Positions 24,270 through 61,414 are shown, counted from the stretch's first letter. The stretch is DNA of 64,000 nucleotides from IMGVR_UViG_3300009177_000028:140388-204387; one strand, 5' to 3'. The notes: generated by a model not told the origin, from the letters alone. Program-made: numbers and translations.

Positions 24270-24830
24270 ATGAACTTCACGACCAAACCGGATACGTTCG
24301 TTCTCGTGGTGGCGGCCCTGTCGGATAAGCTGGTCCAGAAGGAGAACGAGTGTGTGGAGCTGCGAGACCACATCGCCTCCGACCATGCCAGCATGGACGA
24401 CATGCAGCGCACCATCACCGACCTGCGGGTCCAGTGTGAGCGACTGCAAGACAAGGCGGATGATGTGGACTACTTCCGCACTCGCTATCAGGACATGTCC
24501 CACAAGCTGGAGAACTACGAACACCTCCGCTCACAGAATGCCGAACTGTGGGAGCAGGTGCGAGTCCTGAAGATGGAGAACCACAAGCTCCGCTACGGTG
24601 GGCAGACTCCCGAGGAGACGGCCAACAACTACATGCTCTCCCAGGGGAGGCAGGTGTGGGAGCGTGGCAACAAGATTCAGTGCATCAAGGAGGTGCGAGA
24701 GGTGAGTGGATGGGGGCTGAAGGAAACCAAGGATTGGTGCGAAGCCTACATCGCCCGCCTGGATAACGAAAAGGAGGAGAGCGGCCCCGGTACCAAGCGC
24801 TCCTCCGGCAACGTAGCCAAAACTGGCTGA
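24270..24830 (+). CDS. coiled-coil protein with ribosomal bL12 (L7/L12) C-terminal-domain-like motif
   Basis: heptad-rich region then NKIQCIKEVREVSGWGLKETKDWCE. Confidence 0.65.
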   Translation: MNFTTKPDTFVLVVAALSDKLVQKENECVELRDHIASDHASMDDMQRTITDLRVQCERLQDKADDVDYFRTRYQDMSHKLENYEHLRSQNAELWEQVRVLKMENHKLRYGGQTPEETANNYMLSQGRQVWERGNKIQCIKEVREVSGWGLKETKDWCEAYIARLDNEKEESGPGTKRSSGNVAKTG

Positions 24831-24834
24831 CGCA

Positions 24835-24876
24835 CCTACACCCTGCCTCTATGTGTGAACATGGGGGCAGGAGTAG
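24835..24876 (+). ncRNA. intergenic hairpin family copy H6
   Basis: CCTAC-ACC-CTGCCTCTATG...CATGGGGGCAG-GA-GTAG. Confidence 0.72.
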
Positions 24877-24911
24877 CTGATTCAGACACAACACATGAAA
24901 GGAGAGAGGTC

Positions 24912-25037
24912 ATGAAGGTTCACAAGTCGCAGCGTGTGTTCCAAGAGGAGAAGAAGTATCCGGGTGTGGGTGCCCTCATCTGCGTCGGCTCTGGTCTCCT
25001 CTTTTGGGGGAGCTTGGCCTACCTCTTCGTTCACTGA
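24912..25037 (+). CDS. small membrane protein
   Basis: GAGG SD; C-terminal hydrophobic helix. Confidence 0.55.
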   Translation: MKVHKSQRVFQEEKKYPGVGALICVGSGLLFWGSLAYLFVH

Positions 25038-25057
25038 GGGAGTAGTGGGTCCAAGGG

Positions 25058-25092
25058 GTTGGCATGCTTGCATAGTGCAACATCCATGCCAC
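25058..25092 (-). promoter_or_regulatory. repeated sigma54-type element, copy 6 (antisense)
   Basis: minus strand GTGG-CATGGATGTT-GCA, canonical TTGCA -12 box. Confidence 0.7.
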
Positions 25093-25237
25093 AGCAGGCA
25101 TGTCGCCCCTACACCTACCTCAGAATACCTTCACCTATAATTCTTGTTGCACCTAACTTGAAACGTGCTAACTTATAATCTCGCCATTCTCGCAAGCCAA
25201 GGCCAAAACCTACATCGGCCCCATTAGGAGATAAGTC

Positions 25238-26131
25238 ATGAACGTGTATGAGATTGTCACCGAACGGATCATTGCAGCCCTGGAAAAGGGTGTCGTACCT
25301 TGGCGCATGCCCTGGCGTACCCAAGGTGGGAGCGGTCTCCCCAAGAACCTACAGAGTGGGAAGGAGTACCGAGGTGTCAACATCTTCCTACTGGGTGCGC
25401 AGGGGTACGCCTCTCCCTGGTGGGTTACCTACAAGCAGTGTACGGCCCGAGGTGGGCAGGTGCGCAAAGGTGAGAAGGGCACCCCGGTCATCTTCTGGAA
25501 GGTAGGAGATCATAAGACCAAGGTGGGCAAGAGTGGGAAACCGGAGAAGATGTTTATCCTCCGGTACTACACTGTCTTCAATGTCGCCCAGTGTGATGGG
25601 CTGGACTACCCCAAGGAGGCGGTGGTGGAAGCTCCCACCTTCGACCCCATCGAGCAATGCGAGAAGATCGTTCTCGCCTACAAGACCCTACCCAAGATTG
25701 AGCACGGAGGTGGGCGAGCCTGCTACTCCCCCTCCTTCGACAAGGTGATGATGCCGGAAAAGGAGAGCTTTGGTAAGAGGGAGGAATACTACTCCACACT
25801 CTTCCACGAGCTTACCCACAGCACCGGACATGAGAGCAGGTTGAACCGGGATGGGATCATGAATCCCATTCGGTTTGCCTCACATGACTACAGCTTTGAG
25901 GAGCTGGTAGCAGAATGTGGGGCGGCCTTTCTCTGCGCACATGCGGGTATCTTGGATACCACGCTGGACAACTCGGCCGCCTACATCTCCCACTGGGTGA
26001 GCAAGCTGAAGAGTGAGCCAAGGTGGATTGTGGAAGCCTCAAGTAAGGCAGCTAAGGCGGCTGACTACATCATGGGAGACCTGGTCAAAAAGGAGTCAGA
26101 GTCGGAGGAGTCAAGCGAGGAAGCCGCTTGA
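25238..26131 (+). CDS. ardC: ArdC-family ssDNA-binding antirestriction protein with zincin-like domain
   Basis: GVVPWRMPW, YRGVN, TYKQ..GGQVRKGEKG, YTVFNVAQ, TLFHELTHSTGH..RLNR, YSFEELVAE. Confidence 0.93.
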   Translation: MNVYEIVTERIIAALEKGVVPWRMPWRTQGGSGLPKNLQSGKEYRGVNIFLLGAQGYASPWWVTYKQCTARGGQVRKGEKGTPVIFWKVGDHKTKVGKSGKPEKMFILRYYTVFNVAQCDGLDYPKEAVVEAPTFDPIEQCEKIVLAYKTLPKIEHGGGRACYSPSFDKVMMPEKESFGKREEYYSTLFHELTHSTGHESRLNRDGIMNPIRFASHDYSFEELVAECGAAFLCAHAGILDTTLDNSAAYISHWVSKLKSEPRWIVEASSKAAKAADYIMGDLVKKESESEESSEEAA

Positions 26132-26218
26132 ACCGACATGTCAGGGACTGGGCTGGCCTACTCGGCTGGCTCAGTCTATTATCCTACATCCTCACACACA
26201 AGCCCTGAAAGGACGACC

Positions 26219-26638
26219 ATGAACGACAAGAGACCCTGGAATGAGGGAGGGGAGGAGAAGCCATATAGTGTCTCACTGTGGATACAGGATCCCTCCGACA
26301 TGAGTGACAATGACACATGTATGGCCGGGGAAGACTTCGCCACCGAAAAGGAAGCGCGAATGTGTCTGGCCGACATGAACGCACACTTCAATGACAGGTT
26401 CTACAAGGACGTACCTTATGTCCTGTTGGACGGCCCGAACGACCTACACGAGGTGACAGTGCGCACCCAAGCCCTCAAGCGGATGCAACGTGAGAGGGAG
26501 TGCGAGGACAGGGCGGCAAGGTCGGAGATGGCCATGCAAGCTGGGATGGGTATGGGCATTCATGCCTACAACGACATGATGGGATACGACTCTGAAGAGT
26601 ACGACCCTGACCTACACGGATACCTGCACGAAGACTGA
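26219..26638 (+). CDS. hypothetical protein
   Basis: AAAGGA SD; acidic. Confidence 0.75.
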   Translation: MNDKRPWNEGGEEKPYSVSLWIQDPSDMSDNDTCMAGEDFATEKEARMCLADMNAHFNDRFYKDVPYVLLDGPNDLHEVTVRTQALKRMQRERECEDRAARSEMAMQAGMGMGIHAYNDMMGYDSEEYDPDLHGYLHED

Positions 26639-26667
26639 GCAACCACAACAACCCGAAAGGTACGACC

Positions 26668-26886
26668 ATGAGCGACAACAACGGCAACAAGAGCGAAGGT
26701 AGCATCAAGACCGACAAGCGGAAGCAGTCTCTCTACTTTCCGGAGAGCATGCTCCAAGAGATCAAGGAGGAGGCGGCTCGGCTGGATCGTAGTCTGTCGT
26801 GGGTGGTTCAGCGTGCATGGAAGCTGGCACGCACCGAAGTCAAGAATCTGCCCAGCGTCTCCGACATCGAGACGGAGGACGAGTAA
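26668..26886 (+). CDS. MXAN_4361/MXAN_4362-family (TIGR04563-like) ribbon-helix-helix small protein
   Basis: DKRKQSLYFPESMLQEIKEEAARLDRSLSWVVQRAWKLAR matches the myxobacterial family as recalled. Confidence 0.88.
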   Translation: MSDNNGNKSEGSIKTDKRKQSLYFPESMLQEIKEEAARLDRSLSWVVQRAWKLARTEVKNLPSVSDIETEDE

Positions 26887-26894
26887 TCGTACCA

Positions 26895-26936
26895 CCTACA
26901 CCCTGCCCATTAGTGAGAGCTAGTGGGCAGGAGTAG
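26895..26936 (+). ncRNA. intergenic hairpin family copy H7
   Basis: CCTAC-ACC-CTGCCCATTAG...CTAGTGGGCAG-GA-GTAG. Confidence 0.72.
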
Positions 26937-26970
26937 TTGGCATGCTTGCATGTTGCACATCTCATGCCAC
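26936..26970 (-). promoter_or_regulatory. repeated sigma54-type element, copy 7 (antisense)
   Basis: minus strand GTGG-CATGAGATGT-GC then AACATGCAAGCATGCCAAC. Confidence 0.65.
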
Positions 26971-27004
26971 GGGGCGCCAGGCCCACACTCACCCACAATT
27001 CAGC

Positions 27005-27022
27005 GTGGCACATGACTTGCAT
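27005..27022 (+). promoter_or_regulatory. sigma54-type promoter (sense)
   Basis: GTGGCACATGACTTGCAT, canonical TGGCAC-N5-TTGC. Confidence 0.65.
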
Positions 27023-27079
27023 GTAATTGCATGGTCAATCAAAAGTGCTACAATTGATCAAAAGGAAAAGGAGGTTATC

Positions 27080-27313
27080 ATGTTTGGTATGAACAAGGCG
27101 CACATTGACACCGTCTATCAGCGAGAGGACGACATGTCCGACCTGATGCGCCGATGTCGGATGGCCCTCGACATGGGAGCCTCCAAGGAAGAAGTTCACG
27201 ACATCTGCATCCAAGCGGGTCAAAGTGAGGAACAAGCCTACTTGACCTACATCGCAGCCAAGCTGCTCACACGTGACGAAGCGTGCGAGACTGGCGCCCG
27301 AAAGGTGGCCTGA
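27080..27313 (+). CDS. hypothetical protein
   Basis: AAGGAGG SD, ATG 27080. Confidence 0.75.
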   Translation: MFGMNKAHIDTVYQREDDMSDLMRRCRMALDMGASKEEVHDICIQAGQSEEQAYLTYIAAKLLTRDEACETGARKVA

Positions 27314-27314
27314 C

Positions 27315-27791
27315 ATGTACTCCAAAGAGATCAAAGGTAGTTGGTTCGGCGTGACCATTCCCGAATGGTTGCGAGCCTTCGACTGTCGGTCCAGCGAGGA
27401 CGATATCGCACCTCGTACTCCCTGGGGCTCCTATCTCTGGTCAAGTGAGAGAGCTGCCGTGGACCTGGGCCTGCGTGCGGAAGGTGTCTACAACGACACT
27501 ACGCCCGTGGGCTGCTCCACCTACATCGATGCTCGTACGGCTCCTGAGTCGGAGTTGAAACGACAGGTGGAGAATATGGTGGCAGAGGCGACCAGACTTC
27601 GGGAGGAGTACCTAGAAGGGAAGAAGTTTCCCGATACTGAGGGACAAGGTGGGAGTTGTCTCTACATGCCGGTGGCTGTCTGCCTGAGTAACTTCGGGTG
27701 GTCGGTCCTGGCAGATCGGACCCAAGGAATCGTTCGCCGGTTTGGCTACAATGCCACACCCAAACGTACCAAGAAAGGAAGTGTGCGATGA
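27315..27791 (+). CDS. hypothetical protein
   Basis: abuts previous stop; ATGA overlap to next. Confidence 0.75.
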   Translation: MYSKEIKGSWFGVTIPEWLRAFDCRSSEDDIAPRTPWGSYLWSSERAAVDLGLRAEGVYNDTTPVGCSTYIDARTAPESELKRQVENMVAEATRLREEYLEGKKFPDTEGQGGSCLYMPVAVCLSNFGWSVLADRTQGIVRRFGYNATPKRTKKGSVR

Positions 27792-28390
27792 GCAAGTACA
27801 AGGGTGACGGGGCGTTGGAGCAGATCAACCCCGAGCGACTTACCTTGGGGTGTGTGGTGCGCATGCCCTACGGAAGTGGGGAAGTGCCTGCCTTTGGTGA
27901 CAGTGTCATCATCGGTATCCACGTCTCCTACTCTTCCAAGCGAACGAGTAAGGAGCGGTGCGATAAGCGCCACTACGAGACTCTCGCACAAGCTCTTACC
28001 CAAGCGCAGGATGGCGACTTCGTGGTGGTGAGTCTGGCTCGCCCCTACGTGTACGCCAACAACCCCTTCGTCTCTACACCGGGCTGGCTGGTCGGGTGCG
28101 AGAAGTACGAGGTGATGGGAGACCGCATCATCGACACCCACAAGGTGGTGGTTCAGAGCACGGGTGAGTATGCCACCTACAACATCAAACCTGCGCTCCA
28201 TTCGTGGGAGGTGGTGGTTGGCAACATCGGGAGCGTCTATCGCGACTTGTCGGAGAGCGCGGCCCGAGCCACCTACAAGGTGTACGTAGAGAACAGCAAG
28301 TGGCAGGGTGGACGTGCCAGTGGGGAAAGCGTCACTCTCTTCTGCGATGGTGAGATTGTGGAGGAGCATGTGGGGACGGTGGAAGGATGA
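27788..28390 (+). CDS. hypothetical protein
   Basis: coupled ORF, coding-like GC3. Confidence 0.75.
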   Translation: MSKYKGDGALEQINPERLTLGCVVRMPYGSGEVPAFGDSVIIGIHVSYSSKRTSKERCDKRHYETLAQALTQAQDGDFVVVSLARPYVYANNPFVSTPGWLVGCEKYEVMGDRIIDTHKVVVQSTGEYATYNIKPALHSWEVVVGNIGSVYRDLSESAARATYKVYVENSKWQGGRASGESVTLFCDGEIVEEHVGTVEG

Positions 28391-28629
28391 TTACATACCT
28401 CGACCCCAAACAAGTCATTGCCAAGCGCCAGACCACTCCTCCCCACAACCGGAGTCGCAGTGGGTATGGCAACAAGCTGCCTACATCCTGGGAGCTTCAA
28501 CTACAGGACAAGCGGTGGAGGCGGGTGTACGTGATTCAGTGGAGCAACGCTGGATCCGCCTACATCCTGGTCAAAGGTGAGAAGTTGTTCCTGGGTTCCT
28601 ACGAACCCTCCTATGAAGGGAAGGTGTGA
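28387..28629 (+). CDS. conserved phage-type hypothetical protein
   Basis: GYGNKLPT...RRVY..WSNAGSAY motif recalled from phage hypotheticals. Confidence 0.7.
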   Translation: MITYLDPKQVIAKRQTTPPHNRSRSGYGNKLPTSWELQLQDKRWRRVYVIQWSNAGSAYILVKGEKLFLGSYEPSYEGKV

Positions 28630-28630
28630 G

Positions 28631-29011
28631 ATGGGCTGGGATAAAGCATGCGGAGATGAGCAGTGTGAGGGATGTGACGCCACCCTGGAGGAAGGGGAGG
28701 ACATGTATGTCCAAGGGGACAGCGTGTACTGCGAAGGGTGCAACGAGGACCGCTTGGATGACGAAGCGGGTGAATGGGATGAATTGGACTACATGGACCG
28801 TGAAGGTGACTATCCCATCGATGGGGTAGGATTCGCGGACCCTGGTGGTCACTCGGCCCTACGTGCAGCTACACCCAACAACCCAAGGGACTGCGATTGT
28901 CCTACCTGTGGGGCGGAGGACGTTCTGACCCGCATCGACCGTCAACGTGGGTATCAGTGCGACAGGTGCGCTGATCGGGCGGAAGGTCGGAGCGGGTACG
29001 GAGACTACTGA
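28631..29011 (+). CDS. Zn-finger acidic protein
   Basis: several CxxC pairs (CEGC, CPTC, CDRC). Confidence 0.75.
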   Translation: MGWDKACGDEQCEGCDATLEEGEDMYVQGDSVYCEGCNEDRLDDEAGEWDELDYMDREGDYPIDGVGFADPGGHSALRAATPNNPRDCDCPTCGAEDVLTRIDRQRGYQCDRCADRAEGRSGYGDY

Positions 29012-29012
29012 C

Positions 29013-29330
29013 ATGAAGACACTGGTGCTGGTGGAGGATGATCTGATGCTTGCTAGCACCTTCATTCGGGTGTTGGGCAAAACTCACAACATCCTCCACT
29101 TCCTGACAGTCAAGGATGCCAGAGCACATCTGGCCTTGAATCCCACACCTGATGTCCTCCTCCTGGATCGTCAGGTGGGGTATGACAATGGGTGGGCGTT
29201 GCGGGAGGAGGTGGGTACGGGTGTCAGGGTGGTCCTGATGACGGGCGCTCCTCCCCAAGGCAATTCACTTACCTTCTTCCACAAGGGAGTAGATAACATA
29301 CAAAAACTTATCAGTATGGTAGAAGGCTAA
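29013..29330 (+). CDS. stand-alone receiver domain protein
   Basis: LVLVEDD, VLLLD, VLMTG, FHKG. Confidence 0.8.
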   Translation: MKTLVLVEDDLMLASTFIRVLGKTHNILHFLTVKDARAHLALNPTPDVLLLDRQVGYDNGWALREEVGTGVRVVLMTGAPPQGNSLTFFHKGVDNIQKLISMVEG

Positions 29331-29334
29331 ACTT

Positions 29335-29377
29335 CCTACACCCTGCCTATTAGAATTATCTAGTGGGCAGAAGTAGG
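29335..29377 (+). ncRNA. intergenic hairpin family copy H8
   Basis: CCTAC-ACC-CTGCCTATTAG...CTAGTGGGCAG-AA-GTAGG. Confidence 0.72.
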
Positions 29378-29421
29378 GGGATTCATCCTGAATCTTCTGA
29401 GACAAGGAAAGAGGAGAGCGC

Positions 29422-29976: not shown

Positions 29977-29984
29977 AGATACTT

Positions 29985-30058
29985 TCTACATCCTGCCGAT
30001 TATTCGTCTGGCTGATAAACTCGGTTTATTCGTCTGGCAGATAGTCGGCAGTAGTAGG
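29985..30058 (+). ncRNA. intergenic hairpin family copy H9 (extended)
   Basis: TCTAC-ATC-CTGCCGATTAT...ATAGTCGGCAG-TA-GTAGG; loop holds TATTCGTCTGGC twice (30001, 30027). Confidence 0.68.
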
Positions 30059-30304
30059 AGGTGTGTCATGTAATCGGCTAACTAACTTGTTTACCCGATA
30101 GTGTGGGAAACCCTGAGAGTGTGTCGCGACATTCAAGACATGGTGTATTGAATGGGCGCATGTGAGAATCCACGATACCCCAAGAGCTTTTGACGACAAT
30201 GTAGTTCTAAGTCTTCTATTACTCGCCTATAACCGAAACCTGCCGAAAGGGTGGGGAGTAGGTTATGGGCGCACATAGAGGGATTAGAAAGGAAAGGCAA
30301 GACC

Positions 30305-32604: not shown

Positions 32605-32805
32605 ATGGCGGTCAAGGTATCGGACTTGAAGGATCAGATAGGTGTGGGTGGCCCTCACCCTATCCTCTACTGTCGGTGTTGTGGGGGAGAGTATTCGGCC
32701 AACAAAGGCGATTACTTTCTCCTACCTCCTGACGAAGTGATGACTTGTTGTGAGCAAGAGTTGGTGCTTGTCACCAAACGTGTGGTGTATCAAGAGACAA
32801 GCTGA
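32605..32805 (+). CDS. small Cys-containing protein
   Basis: GGAGG SD; CRCC and CC. Confidence 0.65.
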   Translation: MAVKVSDLKDQIGVGGPHPILYCRCCGGEYSANKGDYFLLPPDEVMTCCEQELVLVTKRVVYQETS

Positions 32806-33221
32806 TGGGAGTTGCTGCACACACCATCCTCATTGTTGAGGATAACAACGACATTCGGCTTCTTTTCACCGCAGTGTTCACCTTATGTGGGATGAATGTT
32901 CTTGCCACCCGCACACTTAGGGATGCATGTCGGGCATTCGAGGCAGGTGTTCAGATTGACGCCATTATGGTAGATTACACATTACCGGATGGTGTAGGTC
33001 CCAACATCTTGACCCTTCTGGGCGACAAGTTGCCTAAGGTGCGAGTGTTGGTAACTGGACACGATATCACACATCCTGGTTTCAGTGAATGCTTCACCAA
33101 ACCAGTAGACATGGGCCTACTTTGTAGGTCGGTTCGTTCAGGATTGGAGAAGGTATACCATGCAACTAGCGAAGCAAGTGGAACATGCGGGCAAGTCGGT
33201 CAAGGTGTTCTACGACCCTGA
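32805..33221 (+). CDS. stand-alone receiver domain protein
   Basis: ILIVEDN, IMVDYTLPDG, VLVTG, FTKPV. Confidence 0.88.
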   Translation: MGVAAHTILIVEDNNDIRLLFTAVFTLCGMNVLATRTLRDACRAFEAGVQIDAIMVDYTLPDGVGPNILTLLGDKLPKVRVLVTGHDITHPGFSECFTKPVDMGLLCRSVRSGLEKVYHATSEASGTCGQVGQGVLRP

Positions 33222-34663: not shown

Positions 34664-35062
34664 ATGTATACTGTTATGATCGTGGAAGATGACGATGATC
34701 AAATAGTCCTACTGTCGGGTCTCATATCCTCCTTTGGATACCGTGTTCTGACCGCTCGTTCCAAAAAAGAAGCTATGTCTATCATTGACTCACATGTCAA
34801 GATAGATGTTCTCTTTACCGACTTCATGCTCGGAGATGGGACGGGAGGTGAGATTCTGGCCGAGATGCGGGAACGTCTCCCACGTATCATGACCATCCTT
34901 TACACTGGTGTAACCAAGTTTCCTCCCAGTCTCAGTGGTGGGTTTGATGACTACCTAACCAAACCTGTCAATACAAGTGACCTTCGCTGCACCATTGCAT
35001 CCTGCTTAGAGGTGCGCACGCAGCGACAGAGTGATGTGAAGAAGAGTGAACGAGCAGCCTGA
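34664..35062 (+). CDS. stand-alone receiver domain protein
   Basis: VMIVEDDDD, LFTDFMLGDG, ILYTG, LTKPV; ends ERAA. Confidence 0.9.
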   Translation: MYTVMIVEDDDDQIVLLSGLISSFGYRVLTARSKKEAMSIIDSHVKIDVLFTDFMLGDGTGGEILAEMRERLPRIMTILYTGVTKFPPSLSGGFDDYLTKPVNTSDLRCTIASCLEVRTQRQSDVKKSERAA

Positions 35063-54795: not shown

Positions 54796-54854
54796 TCGCT
54801 GAATTTAGTTGCAGGTGATTGCTTAGTGTGATATTACCAAAGATTGGGAGATCA

Positions 54855-56435
54855 ATGCAGCCGATTGATGGTTATTCTAAACCGCTGCTGGACGTGGCTA
54901 ATCCGTTGGACCAATTGGTTGATGTGGCTGAGAAGCATCTCGCCCAAGAACCTACATTGTTCCAGAAGGCGGGTGAGCTAGTATGTATCCTGAAAGACCA
55001 CAATGGTCGTTTAGCTCTCAAACCTACCAAGTCATCCATCATCCGATATCTATTGAGTCGGGTGATTACTTGGTGCAATGAAGGCGAGAGGATCCATCCT
55101 CCTACTTCAGTTGCCAAGTGTTTGGTGGACAAAAGTGGTTGGCAGAATGTCCGCAAGCTGCGGTCTCTCACCACCTTTCCGCCCATTGGAGCTAATGGAT
55201 CCATCAATACTACAGAGGGATATCATCCTGATACTTACGTCTACTTTACAGGCGAAGTAGACTGTAAGATTCCGGATCATCCTACTCAGCAGGATGCTAA
55301 GCGAGCTGTCAGTATTCTTACTGACATTGTATGTGATTTCCCTTTTGCAGAAGAGGGGCATCGTTCGGCTTGGTTGGCCGGTCTCCTTTCTCCACTCTCC
55401 CGTTTTGCTCACGATGGGAATACTCCCATGGTGGTAGTTCAGGCTAATGGTCCGAGGGTAGGTAAAACCAGTCTCGTCAAGATCATCTCCTATATCCTGA
55501 CAGGTGATGAGTGTCCAGTTGTTACTCATACCAAGAATGAGGATGAAACCAGAAAGAGGATTTTGTCCTACCTGAGGATTGGTAGGAGCATGGTTCTGGT
55601 GGATAACGTAGTCGGTGAATATGGTGGAGCTGCCATCAACGCCATGGCTACCAGTCGTCAGTGGGAGGATCGTGTCCTAGGTCATTCTAAGGTTCTACAA
55701 GTACAGAATGATACTACATGGTTCATCACTGGTAACAATATCCTACTGGCCCCCGATACAGCGGAACGGTGTTTGAATATCCGACTTCGTTGTTTGGATG
55801 AGAAACCACATCTTCGTACAGGATTCAAGTATCCTGATTTGTGGAATGTGGTAAGAGAGCGTCGAGCCGAATTGCTCAGTTCCGCACTCATCATTCTCAA
55901 AGCCTACATTATGGCAGGGATGCCGGATCAGAAGTTGCCCAAGTGGGGAAGCTTTGAGCAGTGGTCCAAACTGGTTCGTGGAGCCCTAGTGTGGGCTGGA
56001 GCAGTTGATCCTGCTACCACTAGGCAAGAGTTGGAGATGGAGTCTGATGTAGGCAGATACACTGCCAATGGAATCATCGAAGGATGGTTGCAATTGCAGC
56101 AGATGGTGGGAGCTAAAGATGGGCTTACCACTCGTGAAGCCTATGATTTTATCTCACAAGGTTTGATGGTACCTTCATTGCGAGATGCGTTGGAGGAGAT
56201 TGCGGGCGGTGTAGGGAAACTCCCTAATGCTCATACCATTGGAAGACATCTGCGGGAGATCAAAGACCGTAACTTCAATGGTAAGTGTCTTCGGTGTGTG
56301 CCGAATGATAAGACGGGACATCGTTGGTATGTTGCTGATCTTGGTGGTTCGGGGACAGGGGGACAGGGGGGACAGGATTCGGCCCGAAAAACTAACGGGC
56401 TCAATGGCCATACCAATGGCACGAATCATGCTTGA
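54855..56435 (+). CDS. P-loop ATPase, primase-associated/SF3-like helicase type
   Basis: Walker A GPRVGKT; VLVDNV; RVLGHS; ITGNN; D..RC..IRL; no recognisable primase domain. Confidence 0.65.
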   Translation: MQPIDGYSKPLLDVANPLDQLVDVAEKHLAQEPTLFQKAGELVCILKDHNGRLALKPTKSSIIRYLLSRVITWCNEGERIHPPTSVAKCLVDKSGWQNVRKLRSLTTFPPIGANGSINTTEGYHPDTYVYFTGEVDCKIPDHPTQQDAKRAVSILTDIVCDFPFAEEGHRSAWLAGLLSPLSRFAHDGNTPMVVVQANGPRVGKTSLVKIISYILTGDECPVVTHTKNEDETRKRILSYLRIGRSMVLVDNVVGEYGGAAINAMATSRQWEDRVLGHSKVLQVQNDTTWFITGNNILLAPDTAERCLNIRLRCLDEKPHLRTGFKYPDLWNVVRERRAELLSSALIILKAYIMAGMPDQKLPKWGSFEQWSKLVRGALVWAGAVDPATTRQELEMESDVGRYTANGIIEGWLQLQQMVGAKDGLTTREAYDFISQGLMVPSLRDALEEIAGGVGKLPNAHTIGRHLREIKDRNFNGKCLRCVPNDKTGHRWYVADLGGSGTGGQGGQDSARKTNGLNGHTNGTNHA

Positions 56436-56529
56436 TCTGTTTGGTCCATTTGACTCCATTCCAGTTGAGTGTTATTCTCGTTGGTCCTGGGCGACGTTCA
56501 TGACGCGCCATGTCATAAAGGGGGTATCA

Positions 56530-56766
56530 ATGGGTAAGGGGTTGCTGGTGGTCGGGGCTTTCCTGGTCTCTCTTGTTGCGGTGGTGTCGCCTCAGGGGCC
56601 CTACGTGGCTGCTGGGAGCGATGCGAAGGCCGATTACAGCTCGTGCCGTCGAGCCTGCGAGAAGACCTTCAGCGAGTGCATGCTGCGCTGCTCTGAATGG
56701 CCAACGGATTCTGATAGGTGCAAAGCGGACTGCCAACGTGAGTACCAGCGCTGCAATTGCAGCTAA
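56530..56766 (+). CDS. small secreted Cys-rich peptide
   Basis: signal-like N-terminus; C-x3-C-x6-C-x3-C-x9-C-x3-C-x6-C-x-C. Confidence 0.7.
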   Translation: MGKGLLVVGAFLVSLVAVVSPQGPYVAAGSDAKADYSSCRRACEKTFSECMLRCSEWPTDSDRCKADCQREYQRCNCS

Positions 56767-56776
56767 CGAATTATAC

Positions 56777-56804
56777 TTGACACTTACTGGTTCGGTGCTA
56801 CAAC
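56777..56804 (+). promoter_or_regulatory. sigma70-type promoter
   Basis: TTGACA-16 nt-TACAAC with upstream TG. Confidence 0.5.
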
Positions 56805-56849
56805 TAATAATGCCGGGGCAATTGAGCCCTAAAAGAGAGAGAGAAAGCC

Positions 56850-57212
56850 ATGATCCCGAATGCGTTTTTCCAGAAGTATGTCGTCTACGGTGCGAACGGC
56901 TCGGTCGATGTGAAGAAGTCGGTCAAGTCCTTCGAGGAAGACTTCAACGCCTGGTGTCGTGAACAGGGCGACCTGAAGCCGGCTATCCTCCAGGAGCTGA
57001 CCAACTACAAGCGGCTCGGAGAGGGGAAGCTCACCCACTTCGTCCTCCATCAGCTCAAGCTGGAGCCGACCAAGGAGAACGTGGACCGCATCCAGAATGC
57101 GCTTCAGGAGTTGCAGCGCGCTGGGAAGATCCTCTACAAGACCACGGAAAGCGGCAAGCGCCGTGGACGTGGTGCAGGTTGGGTGATCCGGGAGGATGCG
57201 CGCGCTGCCTGA
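56850..57212 (+). CDS. putative DNA-binding protein, distant paralogue of 61592-61981
   Basis: GSVDV..S....E; THFVLHQL; RGRGAGWV; ends ARAA. Confidence 0.75.
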   Translation: MIPNAFFQKYVVYGANGSVDVKKSVKSFEEDFNAWCREQGDLKPAILQELTNYKRLGEGKLTHFVLHQLKLEPTKENVDRIQNALQELQRAGKILYKTTESGKRRGRGAGWVIREDARAA

Positions 57213-57244
57213 TCCTTCCGGAGCGACCAGAGTGTAATGTGGGG

Positions 57245-57281
57245 AAAGCCCGGTCTCAGCGAAAGCTGAGCCGGGCTTTTC
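57245..57281 (+). terminator. intrinsic terminator
   Basis: AAAGCCCGG(T)CTCAGC-GAAA-GCTGAGCCGGGCTTTT. Confidence 0.85.
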
Positions 57282-57315
57282 GCTTTGGATCCAATCTCTC
57301 AGCATGTAGGGCATC

Positions 57316-58071
57316 ATGATGAAATCGGTTCTGTCATTCGGCTTGGTCTCGATTCCAGTAGAGATTCAGAATACAGTGGCCCCTAATGGAGGCATGTGCT
57401 GGCTATCTCCACAAGGTAATCGAGTATCAGTAGAGTACGTTGACAGTGTGACCGGAGAACGTCTGGTGCGCAATCAGCTCCTTCATGGAGTAGAGGTAAT
57501 CAAGGAAAAGTATGTTACCTTCACCAATGCAGAGCTAAAGGCATTGTTGGATGATAGGGGTAATACCATCCTGATTCAACAGGTAATACCAATTCGAGCA
57601 CTTTCCCTTCATGGTGTGGAAAAGTCATACTACCTGACCCCACATAAGATCCATAAACCATACCGTCTACTACATAGTTGCCTAAAGTCTTCCAACAGGG
57701 CTGCTGTAGGTAAATGGCATACGAGGGGCAAAGACCACCTTGTCTTACTTTACCCTACACCTAGCTCATTGGTCATGCTTCAGCTACACTATCAGACCGA
57801 GTTACGGGAGGTGTGCTTCAGCTTTGCCAAGGGATCCGAGCCCAATCGGCAAGAGGTCGCATTAGCGAACGAATTGCTTGACAGGCTTGCCTCAGACGGG
57901 TTAGATGTGGCGTCCTATCAGGACGAGTATGCCCAGCGCTTGCGTGCCGCAGTTGAGGCAAAACAAGCAGGGAACCCGGATCTCGCGACATTACTACGTA
58001 AGTCGCTGAAAGGCAAACATGAAGGTAGAGCTAAGGGACGCCAAAGTCGAGCTGGAGGTAGGAGAAGGTAA
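57316..58071 (+). CDS. ku: Ku (NHEJ/Gam-like) DNA end-binding protein
   Basis: LSFGLVSIPV, VDSVTGE, YVTFT..EL, EKSYYL.P, YRLL..L....AVG, LH(Y)..ELR, E..LA..L, YQDEY..RL...V.AK. Confidence 0.88.
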   Translation: MMKSVLSFGLVSIPVEIQNTVAPNGGMCWLSPQGNRVSVEYVDSVTGERLVRNQLLHGVEVIKEKYVTFTNAELKALLDDRGNTILIQQVIPIRALSLHGVEKSYYLTPHKIHKPYRLLHSCLKSSNRAAVGKWHTRGKDHLVLLYPTPSSLVMLQLHYQTELREVCFSFAKGSEPNRQEVALANELLDRLASDGLDVASYQDEYAQRLRAAVEAKQAGNPDLATLLRKSLKGKHEGRAKGRQSRAGGRRR

Positions 58072-58378
58072 ACACTTTCTCCACATCAACGGACAGAATG
58101 TCCCAATTCCGAGAGATGTAGGTGTAGCCCTCATCTTTGGAGAAGAAAAACCTCGACCTGCCCCTACCGCCCCGACCAAACCATGTCCACCTTCCAAGGC
58201 GGAGAGGAAGTACGGGTGTCAGACACCATCCGCCAGGAAGAAGCTCTCAGCATCTCTCCTCAAGTTTCACGCCAAACGTAGGCGAAAGGAAGCCGCTGAA
58301 CTGAAAAAGGGCACTCCGGCCAAGAAACATCTCAATGGGAAGTCCCACCTCAACGGTGCCGGGCTCCACATCAACTAA
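58019..58378 (+). CDS. basic hypothetical protein
   Basis: SARKKLSASLLKFHAKRRR basic helix. Confidence 0.65.
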   Translation: MKVELRDAKVELEVGEGKHFLHINGQNVPIPRDVGVALIFGEEKPRPAPTAPTKPCPPSKAERKYGCQTPSARKKLSASLLKFHAKRRRKEAAELKKGTPAKKHLNGKSHLNGAGLHIN

Positions 58379-58388
58379 GAGCAAAAAC

Positions 58389-58465
58389 CAAACGGCCCCT
58401 ACTTCGTAGGCCGATCTCACTCAGTGTGGTGAGGTTGGACCTTCGACTAGGGGCCGTTTTTATTT
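58389..58465 (+). terminator. long hairpin/terminator
   Basis: AAACGGCCCCTA...TAGGGGCCGTTTTTATTT. Confidence 0.75.
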
Positions 58466-58789
58466 GTCCTACGTATCCTACATTTCCCTACATAGTTACC
58501 CACTGTAGTCGTCAAGCAAATACCATGCCATGACGCGGTAACGCAGCCAGCTACGCAAAGAGTGCAAAGTTGCCACAATCTTGCGTACCGAGCAAAAGTG
58601 CCACAACCGTAGGCTTTACGGCTTAGCTACGATGTAGGTGTCGCAACTTTTTGCAGACTGCCACAACGGCCGAGGTCGGGCGGTAGATCGCAGTGCCCTG
58701 GTAGCTCGTGGTCTAATTGACTTGGTTTTCCGGGCAATTACGAGCTTCAATTGTACCCTGCTGGTCTCAGTGTGAATGACCTGCGAAAG

Positions 58790-58806
58790 CTGGCATGGCA
58801 TTAGCA
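58790..58806 (+). promoter_or_regulatory. sigma54-type promoter
   Basis: CTGGCATGGCATTAGCA, GG-N10-GC, about 60 nt upstream of boxA. Confidence 0.55.
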
Positions 58807-58864
58807 ATAGCTCTCATCACGTGGCAACCAGCCACAAAGCAAAAGCAGAATAGCAATTCTGCCA

Positions 58865-58883
58865 TGCTCTTTGAAAACTGAAT
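58865..58883 (+). promoter_or_regulatory. rrn-type boxA antitermination element
   Basis: TGCTCTTTGAAAACTGAAT; 10/12 to E. coli boxA and like the TCTTTGAAAACTGAA form of many rrn leaders. Confidence 0.7.
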
Positions 58884-59199
58884 CCTGACAGTCGGTTAGT
58901 TTCATACTTACCGAGTAGGTTCGAATCGTGGATCCAAAGTGCCACGGTTCGCGGGCTACGTAGCTCGGGCGCGACCTAAGTACCCTTCTGAAACAAGCAG
59001 AGTAGGAGGGCGAAAACACTAGAGAGTCGGCTGACTTGGCTTGCCAAGCGGCCCTCCCTACCGGCGCACTATCTCGAAAGATGAGCATGCACTAATACTT
59101 CTAGTCAGAGTAAAAAGCAAGTTTAGTACCGTATTAGATTACTTATCAACTACGGTACACTAAGTAGTAATTCAGTTTTCACAATGAGAGGAGTCAATC

Positions 59200-59706
59200 A
59201 TGAACGAGACCAAGCAGCAAGCGGTTGCAGTCAAGGTGGAGGATCGATTCAAGGCGCCTCGGCCGGCTTATACGGCGCCCGACAACGGGGGCGTCACAAT
59301 GCCTCAGCCGAAGGACAATCGCCCGGCCCTGAGCCTCAGGGAGCAAGCAAAGCAGAGTGGTGACGACAAGTTGGCGGCGCTCTTCGCTAAGGCAGAAGAG
59401 AATGCTCGCAAGTCGCTGGACCGAGCACAAGGTAAGGTGGTGGAGTCGAAACCCCGAGTTACCAAAAGCCGAAAGCAAAAGGAGCAAACGACCCCCATTA
59501 TTCCTGCTCAATTCAAGCCGGAAGATGTGTGTGATGATGTCACCTTCCTGAAGCGAACCATCAGCGGTGACTACCATTCCCCCGAGATGAAAGCGCTCTT
59601 CTGGGCCAACGGTGGGGAAAAGTTTCTGAAGGCCGGTCTCAGCTACGCTTCGGCTTTCTCCAATCTCCGTAGGGAAAAGCAGAACGCTATCTCCGCAAAG
59701 AAGTAA
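59200..59706 (+). CDS. hypothetical protein
   Basis: GAGGAG SD; charged. Confidence 0.75.
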   Translation: MNETKQQAVAVKVEDRFKAPRPAYTAPDNGGVTMPQPKDNRPALSLREQAKQSGDDKLAALFAKAEENARKSLDRAQGKVVESKPRVTKSRKQKEQTTPIIPAQFKPEDVCDDVTFLKRTISGDYHSPEMKALFWANGGEKFLKAGLSYASAFSNLRREKQNAISAKK

Positions 59707-59727
59707 AGAGAAGGAAAGGAATTCACA

Positions 59728-60453
59728 ATGACCACCAGCAAGATGTCCCCCAAGCGTTTCGTGTCTGCCAAGTTCTCCGGCAAGGTGAGTGCGGAGGGGT
59801 TTCTGTCGGCTCATTGGGAATTCTTGAAAGGTCAGGATTATCTGACCCACATCTTGGAGGCGTACGAAAAGAAAGAGTTGCTCCCTACTCCTACTCTCAT
59901 TGCATGTCAGCAAGCGGTCATTGACCACCTTGGGCAAGTGAGTGAGAACAAGGGGAAAGAGGAAGCTAAAAGGACTACCAGCGGAACCAAGGTGGTTCGA
60001 CGTAAGAAGAATACGCAAGAAGTGGATGCTTCAGAAGTTCCGGATTCCAATTACCTTATCACACTGATGTGCAAGGTGTATGATCGTGCAGGTGCTTGTA
60101 CGATTCAGGTTGGAACGGTGGAACACTTGAATACGGTGGAGGAAGAGAAGAACGGTTTGGTAGTTACCAAAACTGTAAAGACAAGTGAACCTGCTATTTT
60201 TGAAGCAGATACCTTCAATGTAGCTGCGCGGATTGCAGATAGACACTTGTTCAATCGTGGTGATTCGGTGTATGCAATCATCGAAAACACACAAGGGAAA
60301 CCGATTCAAACAATCGTCAATCGGGATGATGCAATCGCCCGAACCTTGGTAAAGCCGAAGGGTCCTAGTGTGAGGAACACTTCATCCGGGGGAAGTAATC
60401 TCGGATTCGGAATCAAGGCAAAGAATGATCGGTCTCACTTTTCGAGAGGATGA
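59728..60453 (+). CDS. hypothetical protein
   Basis: AAGGA SD; 241 aa. Confidence 0.75.
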   Translation: MTTSKMSPKRFVSAKFSGKVSAEGFLSAHWEFLKGQDYLTHILEAYEKKELLPTPTLIACQQAVIDHLGQVSENKGKEEAKRTTSGTKVVRRKKNTQEVDASEVPDSNYLITLMCKVYDRAGACTIQVGTVEHLNTVEEEKNGLVVTKTVKTSEPAIFEADTFNVAARIADRHLFNRGDSVYAIIENTQGKPIQTIVNRDDAIARTLVKPKGPSVRNTSSGGSNLGFGIKAKNDRSHFSRG

Positions 60454-60461
60454 ATTCAATC

Positions 60462-60623
60462 ATGAGCCAGAAGATCAAGCCTCGTCAGCAAAAGAAGCCT
60501 CGTAACTACATCGCTATGGATGCAATCCTTCACTACAAGGGTGGACCCATGCGTGACCGTAGGGAAAAGAGGACTCGAAACCCCCGCAAGAGCTGGGAGA
60601 CGGAGCAGGACAATGTCTTTTGA
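60462..60623 (+). CDS. small basic protein (not in ORF track)
   Basis: 53 aa read by hand: KKPRNYIAMDA..KGGPMRDRREKR. Confidence 0.6.
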   Translation: MSQKIKPRQQKKPRNYIAMDAILHYKGGPMRDRREKRTRNPRKSWETEQDNVF

Positions 60624-60944
60624 TATTACTGAAGTAGAGGAAGAGGTTACTGAAGTAGAAGTAGCTTCGCTTTTGTTCGGTGGTTCTTTTCACCTACTCT
60701 GGGAAGAGCAGCGTGAACGTAAGGAAAAAGAGGAGTTTTGGGCCGACCCTTGTTGGTCGGAGGAATAACCTGACATAGATGTGAGGTCAGCCATGTATCG
60801 GGTAATCAATCAAGGAAAAGTAGTAGGTAACTTTCAATTCTTTTTTGATGCATGGCTACACGCCTTTCTTGAATTACCTGTCTACTCCCGGATCAAAGGT
60901 CCGGATGGTGTGTGGACGGTCAACCCTCTAACCAACTGAGAAGT

Positions 60945-61094
60945 ATGATTACTAATCTGAATGTGCGCAAAGTCGAGAACGGATACTTTGCCGACTACTG
61001 GAAAGCGGATGAAAAAGGAAGTTCCAAGTCATATCAGCGAGTCTTCTACACATGGGAAGAGCTGTGTGACTGGCTAAAGGAGCAAGTCAAGTGA
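60945..61094 (+). CDS. small hypothetical protein
   Basis: VRKVENGY motif; GTGA overlap to next. Confidence 0.6.
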
Positions 61095-61414
61095 AGATCG
61101 AATTGTCGAGTGCGGAATTGCAGGTGCTTATGGCACCGGGTGAGCGTGCCCAGACCGAGGTAGTTCGTCTGAATGCGGAAGTTGCAAAGTTGAATACCCA
61201 ACTTGCAATGATGTCGGCGGGTCCTACAGGGACAGCAGAAGATAACAGGTATCCAGTTATCAATGCCCTGACTCATGTGTGTACGGCACTGGTCAATGGA
61301 AACAAGATCACTGCAATCAAGATTACCCGAGAGTTGACGGGTCTTGGTTTGAAGGAAGCAAAGGATGTCGTGGAAGGAAACTACACGGGTCCAGGTGTGC
61401 GGAAGACGTACTGA
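61091..61414 (+). CDS. coiled-coil plus ribosomal bL12 (L7/L12) C-terminal-domain-like protein
   Basis: [26 protein letters not shown] vs E. coli bL12 [25 protein letters not shown]. Confidence 0.8.

What the first reader, a model, noticed from the sequence alone, without database searches (positions are those of the whole stretch)
24270..61414. Two coiled-coil proteins capped with ribosomal bL12 C-terminal-domain mimics
Seen: 61091 has [24 protein letters not shown] and 24270 has KIQCIKEVREVSGWGLKETKDWCE, each after a coiled coil instead of the bL12 N-terminal dimerisation domain. Knowledge: the bL12 CTD recruits translational GTPases (EF-Tu, EF-G, IF2, RF3), and phage-encoded bL12-like genes have been reported. 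Inference: oligomeric GTPase-factor sponges or recruiters; with RF2 this suggests multi-point control of translation.
Basis: partly seen in the sequence, partly recalled or inferred. Interest (0 to 1): 0.6.

Follow-up and report, generated by a model that had tools for sequence, protein, structure and literature searches.

The report
Coiled-coil phage proteins bearing bL12 fragment
A huge soil phage encodes two related proteins that join a coiled-coil stalk to only the two factor-binding helices of ribosomal protein bL12, so they may capture the host's translation GTPases away from the ribosome; phage bL12-like genes are already known, and this is a stripped-down variant whose function is untested.

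Summary
Both genes are real (window 24270-24830, 186 aa; 61091-61414, 107 aa), with Shine-Dalgarno sites and conserved families of about 17 clusters each. Both score above Pfam's Ribosomal_L12 cut-off, but only over profile positions 8-36 of 67. Profile comparison limits homology to bL12 to 29-36 columns (end of beta1, alpha4, alpha5).

AlphaFold models show one long heptad-periodic helix, a short linker, a three-helix unit with no strands, and a disordered basic tail (GPGxKR). They are therefore not bL12 CTD folds. They keep the segments that NMR maps as the translational-GTPase contact (E. coli 66-70 and 80-85). They lack the bL12 N-terminal domain (uL10 anchor) and the beta2/alpha6 part (uL11 contact, hydrophobic core). 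The two proteins are paralogues over 78 columns.

The same short module is common in viral contigs. At least 17 otherwise unrelated viral protein families end just after alpha5. Cellular tandem and membrane-anchored versions (DUF6793-like) also exist.

Best reading, at moderate confidence: oligomeric, ribosome-detached displays of the GTPase-docking helices, acting as decoys or recruiters. Binding is untested; the one complex prediction gave no verdict. Phage bL12-domain proteins were reported in 2019, so this is a new variant of a known kind.

The parts
24270..24830 (+). Gene for P0001 (186 aa): long coiled-coil helix, three-helix unit with bL12 alpha4-alpha5, disordered basic tail
   Evidence: ORF. 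Family of 17 clusters at 42-97% identity sharing the same start. The exact protein occurs on 19 contigs from independent assemblies. AF2 mean pLDDT 84.
24259..24263 (+). Shine-Dalgarno AGGAG, 6 nt upstream of the P0001 ATG
   Evidence: Read directly from the sequence.
24288..24596 (+). P0001 residues 7-109: single ~100-residue helix with heptad periodicity (putative coiled coil); conserved N-terminal KPDTFVLVVAALSEKLVQKE
   Evidence: AF2 H7-109 with pLDDT around 90-95. a/d hydrophobic fraction 0.69 vs 0.16 (residues 7-60) and 0.50 vs 0.11 (60-109). Only generic coiled-coil Pfam hits, all below cut-off.
24609..24779 (+). P0001 residues 114-170: three-helix unit (H114-131, H135-146, H150-170)
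   Evidence: AF2. ESM Atlas structural neighbours are bacterial L7/L12-CTD/DUF6793 clusters, TM 0.64-0.65.
24666..24746 (+). P0001 residues 133-159, GNKIQCIKEVREVSGWGLKETKDWCEA: homologous to bL12 alpha4-loop-alpha5
   Evidence: Pfam PF00542 26.6 bits, profile 10-36/67. hhalign 29 columns, 97.7%.
24780..24827 (+). P0001 residues 171-186: disordered basic tail with conserved GPGTKRSS
   Evidence: pLDDT below 50. Conserved in alignment A2. Net charge +3. Aligns to the post-alpha5 loop/strand of a ~124-aa viral family, so it may be a remnant of a truncated CTD.
61091..61414 (+). Gene for P0002 (107 aa, GTG start): short coiled coil, variable linker, three-helix unit with bL12 alpha4-alpha5, short basic tail
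   Evidence: ORF. Family of ~17 clusters at 48-97% identity, all starting MK[IVL][ED]L. Exact protein on 3 further contigs. AF2 mean pLDDT 81.
61077..61082 (+). Shine-Dalgarno AAGGAG, 8 nt upstream of the P0002 GTG; the start overlaps the stop of the upstream 60-aa ORF (GTGA)
   Evidence: Read directly from the sequence.
61109..61213 (+). P0002 residues 7-41: heptad-periodic helix (about 4.5 heptads), invariant P16
   Evidence: AF2 H7-41. a/d hydrophobic fraction 0.80 vs 0.16. VIA-align matches only generic coiled-coil fragments, Z 5 or less.
61214..61234 (+). P0002 residues 42-48: variable, low-confidence linker
   Evidence: pLDDT below 50 at residues 44-47. Length- and sequence-variable columns in A1.
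61235..61372 (+). P0002 residues 49-94: three-helix unit (H49-68, H72-83, H87-94), pLDDT above 90
   Evidence: AF2. No strands.
61292..61378 (+). P0002 residues 68-96, [29 protein letters not shown]: homologous to bL12 alpha4-loop-alpha5
   Evidence: Pfam PF00542 37.5 bits, profile 8-36/67. hhalign 36 columns, 64% identity, 98.7%. [10 protein letters not shown] invariant in A1.
61379..61411 (+). P0002 residues 97-107: tail [11 protein letters not shown] (GPGx[KR][KR], shared with P0001)
   Evidence: BLASTP aligns GPGVRKT with GPGTKRS. The motif occurs in no other ORF tail of the window.
23621..24145 (+). Conserved upstream neighbour of P0001 (174 aa, Cys-rich, zinc-ribbon-like), function unknown
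   Evidence: 50% identical homologue in the same position in related record L013. Only a weak PHROG hit of unknown function.
25238..26131 (+). Conserved downstream neighbour of P0001: ArdC-like anti-restriction protein (ArdcN + zincin metallopeptidase)
   Evidence: Pfam E 4e-37 and 5e-37. Syntenic in L013 (75% identity) and in the 480 kb contig L199.

Best explanation
Shown: P0001 and P0002 are paralogous phage proteins built on one plan. Each has an N-terminal heptad-periodic helix of about 100 or 35 residues. This is followed by a small three-helix unit whose last two helices are homologous to helices alpha4 and alpha5 of the bL12 C-terminal domain. Each ends in a short disordered basic tail. 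They lack the bL12 N-terminal domain and the beta2-alpha6-beta3 half of the CTD. Inferred: the helices oligomerise into a coiled coil. The particle would then display two or more copies of the GTPase-docking helix pair on flexible tethers, like a free-floating miniature ribosomal stalk. Because it cannot dock on uL10 or uL11, it would engage the G domains of host translational GTPases (EF-Tu, EF-G, IF2, RF3, EF4) off the ribosome. Avidity would compensate for the weak single-site affinity. The likely outcome is either titration of factors away from host ribosomes (decoy) or concentration of factors where the phage needs them (recruiter). The position in an arm of small same-strand genes next to ArdC suggests a host-takeover or counter-defence role.
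For: Homology is restricted to alpha4-alpha5 and is highly significant. The retained segments coincide with the two regions (E. coli 66-70 and 80-85) that shift in NMR titrations with EF-G and EF4 and resemble the pattern for IF2, EF-Tu and RF3 (PMC3505967). The equivalents of K65, V66, I69, K70, R73, G79, L80, K81, E82, K84 and D85 are kept in both proteins. They are invariant or nearly so across families A1 and A2, while linkers and coiled coils drift. The two families share only 28% identity over 78 columns yet keep the motif. Seventeen viral families unrelated outside the motif end within 25 residues of alpha5 and keep the same charged positions. Ribosome-anchoring determinants are absent: no PF16320, and no K95, L94, L106 or L110 region. 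Coiled-coil periodicity plus a variable low-pLDDT linker parallels the dimer-hinge-CTD logic of bL12. No phage translational GTPase gene is found in the 204 kb held, so any GTPase partner would be the host's. The gene order Zn-ribbon, P0001, ArdC is conserved in two related huge-phage contigs. Another huge phage carries three separate PF00542-matching ORFs.
Against: No binding evidence exists; the one complex prediction (EF-G 1-300 with P0002 48-107) gave no verdict. Genuine CTD-factor affinity is only 0.1-0.4 mM, and here half of the domain is missing. It is not shown that the factor face stays exposed and is not covered by the extra helix. Conservation of GLKEAKD could reflect the folding needs of a tight helix-loop-helix. 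The viral census was seeded with motif patterns, so its conservation is partly ascertainment. The same module occurs in cellular tandem and membrane-anchored proteins whose gene neighbourhoods have no link to translation. Oligomerisation is inferred, not tested. All immediate neighbours except ArdC are of unknown function. No RNA run was listed.
Confidence: 0.4

Rival explanations
1. Repurposed interaction module. The three-helix unit (DUF6793-like) is a small, portable protein-protein adaptor that originated from bL12 but now binds partners unrelated to translation, such as other phage proteins or other host proteins. The conserved residues would be kept for folding of the helix-loop-helix and for that new partner.
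For: The module appears in many unrelated architectures: at N-termini, internally, at C-termini, in tandem and next to transmembrane helices, in viruses and in bacteria. The cellular neighbourhoods examined have no translation genes. The bL12 alpha/beta fold is lost. Structure searches give only generic three-helix matches, Z 5 or less.
Against: Solvent-facing charged residues that in bL12 are conserved for factor contact stay nearly invariant across families that share nothing else. A new partner would be expected to let them drift. Profile identity to genuine bL12 remains 48-64% over the motif.
Confidence: 0.3
2. Ribosome-associated stalk modifier. The proteins associate with host ribosomes and add or replace factor-recruiting heads at the GTPase-associated centre, biasing translation toward phage mRNAs, as proposed for phage bL12-domain proteins.
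For: Mizuno et al. detected a 418-aa phage protein, whose bL12 domain covers only ~16% of its length, in purified 70S fractions by mass spectrometry. They proposed interfaces for translation factors (PMC6375957). Huge-phage papers list L7/L12 among translation-hijacking genes.
Against: There is no bL12 NTD and no alignment to it, so uL10 helix-8 binding is not expected. The uL11-contact region (alpha6, K95, L106) is absent. In Mizuno et al. only one peptide was found, and tagged protein could not be used to purify ribosomes.
Confidence: 0.12
3. Nucleic-acid-binding regulators. A dimeric coiled coil presents two helix-turn-helix-like units plus basic tails to DNA or RNA. From my own recollection, not checked here, the bL12 alpha4-alpha5 pair was noted long ago to resemble a DNA-binding HTH.
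For: The layout is three helices with a tight G-x-G turn. A homeodomain cluster appears among Atlas structural neighbours (TM 0.58). The tails are basic (+3 and +2). Dimeric coiled coil plus HTH is a common regulator design. The neighbours include DNA-related ArdC and Ku.
Against: The three-helix units are not basic (net -3 and 0), and the would-be recognition helix LKEAKDVVE is acidic or neutral. There is no Pfam HTH hit. TM 0.58 over about 60 residues of a three-helix bundle is uninformative.
Confidence: 0.06
4. Decaying remnants. The genes are truncated leftovers of once complete phage bL12-like genes and have no current function.
For: P0001's tail aligns with the post-alpha5 loop/strand of a longer viral family, consistent with C-terminal truncation.
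Against: Both have intact frames, good Shine-Dalgarno sites, confident models and families of ~17 clusters at 42-97% identity. Conservation is position-specific, and the end points are conserved. The truncation itself is conserved, and P0001's position in the gene order is kept in two relatives.
Confidence: 0.03

Closest known systems
Bacterial ribosomal protein bL12 (L7/L12), C-terminal domain (Pfam PF00542; PDB 1CTF, 1DD3)
   Same: The alpha4-loop-alpha5 sequence, 48-64% profile identity over 29-36 columns. The residues that contact translational GTPases are retained. The overall logic of oligomerisation element, flexible linker and factor-binding head is the same.
   Different: No Ribosomal_L12_N domain for dimerisation and uL10 binding. 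No beta2-alpha6-beta3, hence no alpha/beta fold, no uL11 contact and no bL12 hydrophobic core. An extra preceding helix makes a three-helix unit. Oligomerisation would be by a parallel-type heptad helix, not the bL12 four-helix NTD.
Phage-encoded bL12-domain proteins (Mizuno et al. 2019, PMC6375957; listed for huge phages in PMC7162821 and PMC11748809)
   Same: Phage ORFs that match Ribosomal_L12 over only part of their length, embedded in otherwise unrelated polypeptides and found in varied genomic contexts. Their function is unresolved, and a proposed role is providing interfaces for translation factors.
   Different: Those reports treat the hits as bL12 domains. Here the match is dissected and shown to be the alpha4-alpha5 pair alone on a coiled coil. 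Two paralogues sit in one huge phage, with conserved synteny next to ArdC.
DUF6793 / bacterial 'L7/L12 C-terminal domain-containing' proteins (Pfam PF20593 overlapping PF00542)
   Same: The same three-helix unit (Atlas TM 0.64-0.65) and the same KIxAIKxxRExTGxGLKEAKDxVE motif. It occurs as a free-standing module outside the ribosome.
   Different: The cellular forms are tandem duplications or carry a C-terminal transmembrane helix and have no coiled coil. P0002 scores below the DUF6793 cut-off (18.3 vs 27 bits) and P0001 does not match. They are also uncharacterised.
Archaeal/eukaryotic P-stalk C-terminal peptide (works-like comparison only, from general knowledge)
   Same: A minimal factor-binding element displayed in several copies on flexible tethers from an oligomeric helical base, recruiting translational GTPases.
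   Different: No sequence or structural homology. It is ribosome-anchored, whereas these phage proteins lack any recognisable anchor.
ClpS
   Same: Nothing beyond the historical fold similarity of ClpS to the complete bL12 CTD.
   Different: That similarity concerns the whole alpha/beta domain, which is absent here. There is no ClpS Pfam hit.

Membership tests
Ribosomal protein bL12 (L7/L12) | N-terminal dimerisation/uL10-binding domain (Pfam PF16320 Ribosomal_L12_N) | tested here: not met
   No PF16320 hit at E up to 1. hhalign against full-length bL12 profiles aligns only the alpha4-alpha5 region.
Ribosomal protein bL12 (L7/L12) | Sequence of CTD helices alpha4-alpha5 ([24 protein letters not shown]) | tested here: met
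   PF00542 above gathering score for both. hhalign 98.7% and 97.7%. PDB phmmer best hits are L7/L12.
Ribosomal protein bL12 (L7/L12) | Complete alpha/beta CTD fold (beta1-alpha4-alpha5-beta2-alpha6-beta3, about 68 residues) | tested here: not met
   Only profile positions 8-36 of 67 match. Just 11 and 27 residues follow alpha5. AF2 models have no strands. Foldseek E is 2 or worse.
Ribosomal protein bL12 (L7/L12) | uL11-contact and core residues (K95, L94, L106, L110; cleft between alpha4 and alpha6) | tested here: not met
   The region is absent from both proteins. The residue map comes from PMC3505967.
Ribosomal protein bL12 (L7/L12) | Binds translational GTPases through residues 66-70 and 80-85 | not testable with these tools
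   The residues are conserved, but binding needs an experiment. The single complex prediction returned no verdict and is not evidence either way.
Phage-encoded bL12-domain proteins (Mizuno et al. 2019) | Encoded on a phage genome | tested here: met
   IMG/VR virus record of 204 kb. It carries a DnaB-like helicase, another helicase, RNR, a weak PhuZ-like hit and a weak virion-protein hit. Relatives lie on 203-480 kb contigs.
Phage-encoded bL12-domain proteins (Mizuno et al. 2019) | Significant Ribosomal_L12 match embedded in a non-bL12 polypeptide | tested here: met
   The paper describes partial-coverage hits in larger proteins.
Phage-encoded bL12-domain proteins (Mizuno et al. 2019) | Association with 70S ribosomes | not testable with these tools
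   Needs ribosome fractionation. It was only weakly shown for one protein in the paper.
DUF6793 (Pfam PF20593) | Score at or above the Pfam gathering cut-off (27 bits) | tested here: not met
   P0002 scores 18.3 bits (E 0.0024) and P0001 has no hit. Structural neighbours do carry DUF6793.
Coiled-coil oligomer | Heptad periodicity of hydrophobic residues in a long uninterrupted helix | tested here: met
   AF2 helices 7-109 and 7-41. a/d occupancy 0.69-0.80 vs 0.16.
Coiled-coil oligomer | Self-association (dimer or higher) | not tested
SEC-MALS or cross-linking is needed.

The most novel reading that the evidence does not exclude
The short alpha4-alpha5 unit is a widespread, portable 'translational-GTPase handle'. 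Phages, and some bacteria, would graft it onto coiled coils, membrane anchors and enzymes to capture or relocate EF-Tu, EF-G, IF2 or RF3 off the ribosome. In this huge phage, two coiled-coil versions would act as free-floating mini-stalks. One lies in a conserved block with the anti-restriction gene ArdC. They would either shut down host translation or shield elongation factors from translation-targeting abortive-infection systems.
Probability: 0.25. Interest if true: 0.75.

Novelty: new variant of a known kind. Interest (0 to 1): 0.45.

Why it matters
Annotation pipelines and surveys count these genes as 'phage ribosomal protein L7/L12', implying that phages remodel the ribosomal stalk. These two proteins, and many other viral hits, carry only the factor-docking helix pair and none of the parts that attach bL12 to the ribosome. 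This changes the question from 'do phages replace stalk proteins?' to 'do phages intercept translational GTPases in solution?'. That hypothesis can be tested directly with small, easily expressed proteins. If binding is confirmed, it would define a minimal GTPase-binding module that is useful as a tool. It would also add a new route of host-translation takeover or counter-defence. If binding is not confirmed, many 'viral bL12' annotations should be read as a repurposed three-helix adaptor.

Tried and rejected
1. Complex prediction of E. coli EF-G residues 1-300 with P0002 residues 48-107 gave no verdict (score 0.28 and 0.22, mark 0.34; controls not run). It is not evidence for or against binding.

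2. Foldseek against the PDB found nothing at E 0.001 or better. The top non-significant rows were bL12 CTDs over 20-37 columns. VIA-align against 48,161 chains gave Z 5 or less, only generic coiled coils and a designed three-helix mini-protein.

3. I tested whether P0002's N-terminus ([11 protein letters not shown]) is homologous to that of an abundant ~124-aa viral family (MIKLELSVREA). hhalign aligns only the motif region, so I rejected this.

4. I tested whether homology to bL12 extends into the hinge or NTD. phmmer stretched an alignment across the hinge, but the profile comparison does not support it.

5. My first census by HMM coverage ('117 of 143 viral ORFs have alpha4-alpha5 only') overcounts. 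The 124-aa family probably keeps a divergent beta2-alpha6-beta3. I replaced it with the tail-length criterion.

6. Neighbouring genes gave no functional clue in PHROGs or Pfam.

7. Cellular membrane-anchored modules have uninformative neighbourhoods.

8. No RNA sequencing run was listed for the P0001 region.

9. No near-identical DNA was found in the plasmid or phage collections.

10. The 480 kb ENA record could not be searched for a P0002 paralogue because it is not held.

11. A chimeric assembly as the cause of the GC break is rejected: the junction recurs in independent assemblies and in relatives.

12. The big representative-protein search and the third word-based search were not used, because no claim here rests on absence of relatives.

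Full report
**Setting.** The window is the last 64 kb of a 204,387-bp IMG/VR virus record, with a CheckV completeness estimate of 48%. The record carries a DnaB-like helicase, a second DNA helicase, a ribonucleotide reductase, a weak PhuZ-like tubulin hit, a weak virion-protein hit, and ORFs of up to 2,386 aa. Relatives lie on contigs of 203 kb and 480 kb. It is therefore a huge phage of roughly 400-480 kb from soil or rhizosphere metagenomes. Both genes of the finding lie in a compositionally distinct arm: 50-58% GC against 40% for the first ~160 kb. The junction is not an assembly artefact. It recurs in independent ENA, JGI and Logan assemblies and in two diverged relatives with syntenic genes on both sides.

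**Observation.** The ORFs 24270-24830 (P0001, 186 aa, ATG) and 61091-61414 (P0002, 107 aa, GTG) exist and contain the quoted peptides. Each has a canonical Shine-Dalgarno site: AGGAG 6 nt upstream of P0001 and AAGGAG 8 nt upstream of P0002. Each has a family of about 17 clusters at 42-97% identity that share the same start and end. The exact P0001 protein occurs on 19 contigs. These are real genes under selection.

- Pfam Ribosomal_L12 matches both above its cut-off of 25.9 bits: 37.5 bits for P0002 and 26.6 bits for P0001. The matches cover only profile positions 8-36 and 10-36 of 67.
- In the PDB, the best sequence match for P0002 and the best bL12 match for P0001 is T. maritima L7/L12, again only over alpha4-alpha5.
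- Profile-profile comparison with 22 genuine bL12 proteins gives 98.7% probability over 36 columns and 97.7% over 29 columns, and nothing elsewhere.
- The two phage families align with each other over 78 columns at 98.1% probability. That alignment covers the end of the coiled coil, the linker, a preceding helix and the motif. A shared tail motif GPGx[KR][KR] follows. They are paralogues.

**Structure.** AlphaFold2 with the family alignments gives the following.

- P0002 (mean pLDDT 81): helix 7-41, a low-confidence linker, then helices 49-68, 72-83 and 87-94 with pLDDT above 90.
- P0001 (mean pLDDT 84): helix 7-109, then helices 114-131, 135-146 and 150-170, then a disordered tail.

Neither model has a beta-strand. 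Only 11 and 27 residues follow alpha5, too few for beta2-alpha6-beta3. The long helices have clear heptad periodicity: strong hydrophobics fill 0.69-0.80 of a/d positions against 0.16 elsewhere. Foldseek and a Foldseek-independent search find no significant fold match. The only local agreement is with the alpha4-alpha5 hairpin of bL12, for example 20 residues at 0.3 Å with the bL12 fragment modelled in 8rdw, an entry that also contains EF-Tu. The ESM Atlas places the C-terminal unit next to bacterial 'L7/L12 C-terminal domain-containing / DUF6793' clusters (TM 0.64-0.65). A homeodomain cluster is also listed (TM 0.58), which shows how generic a three-helix unit is. The phrase 'C-terminal-domain mimic' does not hold, because the proteins carry a fragment of the domain on a new scaffold.

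**What the fragment is.** Zhang et al. (PMC3505967) report three relevant points.

- EF4 and EF-G perturb two regions of the E. coli CTD, residues 66-70 and 80-85. This is similar to the earlier pattern for IF2, EF-Tu and RF3. The dissociation constants are 0.1-0.4 mM.
- uL11 docks into the cleft between alpha4 and alpha6, using K95 and L106.
- The hydrophobic core includes L58, L94, L106 and L110.

Mapped onto the phage proteins, the GTPase-contact segments are present and conserved. P0002 has ITAIK and LKEAKD. P0001 has IQCIK and LKETKD. The equivalents of K65, K70, R73, G79, L80, K81, E82, K84 and D85 are kept. The uL11-contact and core-forming half is absent, and so is the uL10-binding NTD. 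Within family A1, [10 protein letters not shown] is invariant although members are only 48-69% identical overall and the linker is free to vary. Family A2 shows the same pattern.

**How common it is.** I examined 160 loci. Of 143 ORFs matching a bL12 HMM:

- 4 are full bL12;
- 19 have a complete CTD without the NTD;
- the rest are covered only around alpha4-alpha5.

Coverage alone overcounts the short form. An abundant ~124-aa family probably keeps a divergent beta2-alpha6-beta3. With a stricter criterion of at most 25 residues after alpha5, 40 proteins in 17 families unrelated outside the motif qualify, and all keep the same charged positions. Part of this conservation is ascertainment, because the loci were found with motif patterns. 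Other architectures include tandem modules, modules followed by a transmembrane helix in apparently cellular contigs, and modules next to other coiled coils. One other huge phage has three PF00542-matching ORFs. Phage bL12-domain proteins embedded in larger polypeptides were described by Mizuno et al. [quoted passage not shown] L7/L12 and RF1/RF2 are routinely listed for huge phages. I found no paper on DUF6793 or on the short module itself.

**Mechanism.** The best-supported reading is a ribosome-detached, oligomeric display of the GTPase-docking helices.

- Shown: the homology and its limits, the retained contact residues, the missing anchors, the heptad helices, the paralogy, and the conserved position of P0001 next to ArdC.
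- Inferred: oligomerisation, exposure of the factor face, binding to host EF-Tu, EF-G, IF2 or RF3, and the consequence (decoy or recruiter).

The record held encodes no GTP_EFTU-family protein and no tRNA. Only about half of the genome is present, but on this evidence the partners would be host factors. The one complex prediction gave no verdict and is not counted. I put this reading at about 0.4.

The main rival, at about 0.3, is that the unit has become a general adaptor with other partners. The cellular versions in translation-unrelated neighbourhoods support that rival. Stalk incorporation is disfavoured by the missing NTD and alpha6. DNA binding is disfavoured by the neutral-to-acidic units (net -3 and 0), although the tails are basic. 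Pseudogene decay is disfavoured by the conservation pattern.

**Comparison and novelty.** The proteins fail membership of bL12 on three defining features: the NTD, the complete CTD fold and the uL11 contact. They meet one: the alpha4-alpha5 sequence. They do belong to the loosely defined class of phage-encoded bL12-domain proteins. They resemble DUF6793 structurally but fall below its Pfam threshold. They may work like a stalk head without the stalk base. I rate this a new variant of a known kind. New here are the dissection of the match to the bare factor-binding helix pair, the coiled-coil fusion in two paralogues within one huge phage, and the recognition that this truncated form recurs in many unrelated viral proteins. 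The RF2 gene is real: PCRF plus RF-1 domains, with SPF and GGQ. It lies in the low-GC core and offers only co-occurrence, not a link.

**Verdict.** Interest is moderate (0.45). The hypothesis is concrete and cheap to test, but the general phenomenon is published and no functional evidence could be obtained here.

Noticed in passing
window 19853-21514 (junction), arm 20500-64000: There is a sharp GC break from ~40% to 50-58% inside a ~1.6 kb ORF-poor gap between divergently oriented gene blocks. The same jump, with syntenic genes on both sides, occurs in relatives at 30-75% protein identity (L013, L199) and in independent assemblies. It is therefore real and old. Why a >=44 kb arm of a huge phage keeps a different composition is unexplained.
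   Followed up: partly
window 6629-7726 (+): Full-length class-I release factor of RF2 type (PCRF + RF-1 domains, SPF at residue 201, GGQ at 246) in a single frame. No tRNA or suppressor was found in the 204 kb record.
   Followed up: partly
window 9017-17778 (+): About 19 back-to-back small ORFs (109-139 aa), most with overlapping stop/start. They fall into weakly paralogous subgroups (20-29% identity), i.e. a diverged tandem gene array. It is interrupted by a minus-strand HisKA/HATPase histidine kinase at 14242-15459. A similar array precedes the junction in the 480 kb relative L199.
   Followed up: partly
window 25238-26131, 32805-33221, 34664-35062, 57316-58071: The high-GC arm encodes an ArdC-like anti-restriction protein (ArdcN + zincin peptidase), two receiver-only response regulators and a Ku homologue, among dozens of small same-strand ORFs with no family match. 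This looks like a host-takeover or counter-defence region.
   Followed up: partly
window 18432-19196 (-) and 19310-19852 (-): A trypsin-like serine protease and a C39-family peptidase lie on the minus strand immediately before the GC junction. Both are conserved in the relatives L013 and L199.
   Followed up: no
loci L016-L092 (IMG/VR contigs of 20-240 kb): An abundant ~124-aa viral family reads MIKLELSVREA...VTITGGM..NRI.CIKAIR.HTGWGLKEAKDW...SITLKTPEAAE.LLRDL..LGCEGYLS (40 unique sequences). It appears to be a divergent complete bL12-like CTD with a novel N-terminal region and an insertion after alpha5. P0001's tail aligns to that insertion.
   Followed up: partly
proteins P0021, P0035, P0085 (loci L193-L198): Apparently cellular proteins carry one or two copies of the same short module followed by a C-terminal transmembrane helix. 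In both neighbourhoods examined, the next gene is a methyltransferase, of a different family in each. This may be coincidence.
   Followed up: partly
G002 (IMGVR_UViG_3300043411_000942, 233 kb): 67538-67657, 90178-90276, 138003-138203: Another huge-phage record carries three separate Ribosomal_L12-matching ORFs: one with a complete CTD, one P0002-like, and one zinc-ribbon protein capped by the motif. Multiple module-bearing genes per genome therefore recur.
   Followed up: no
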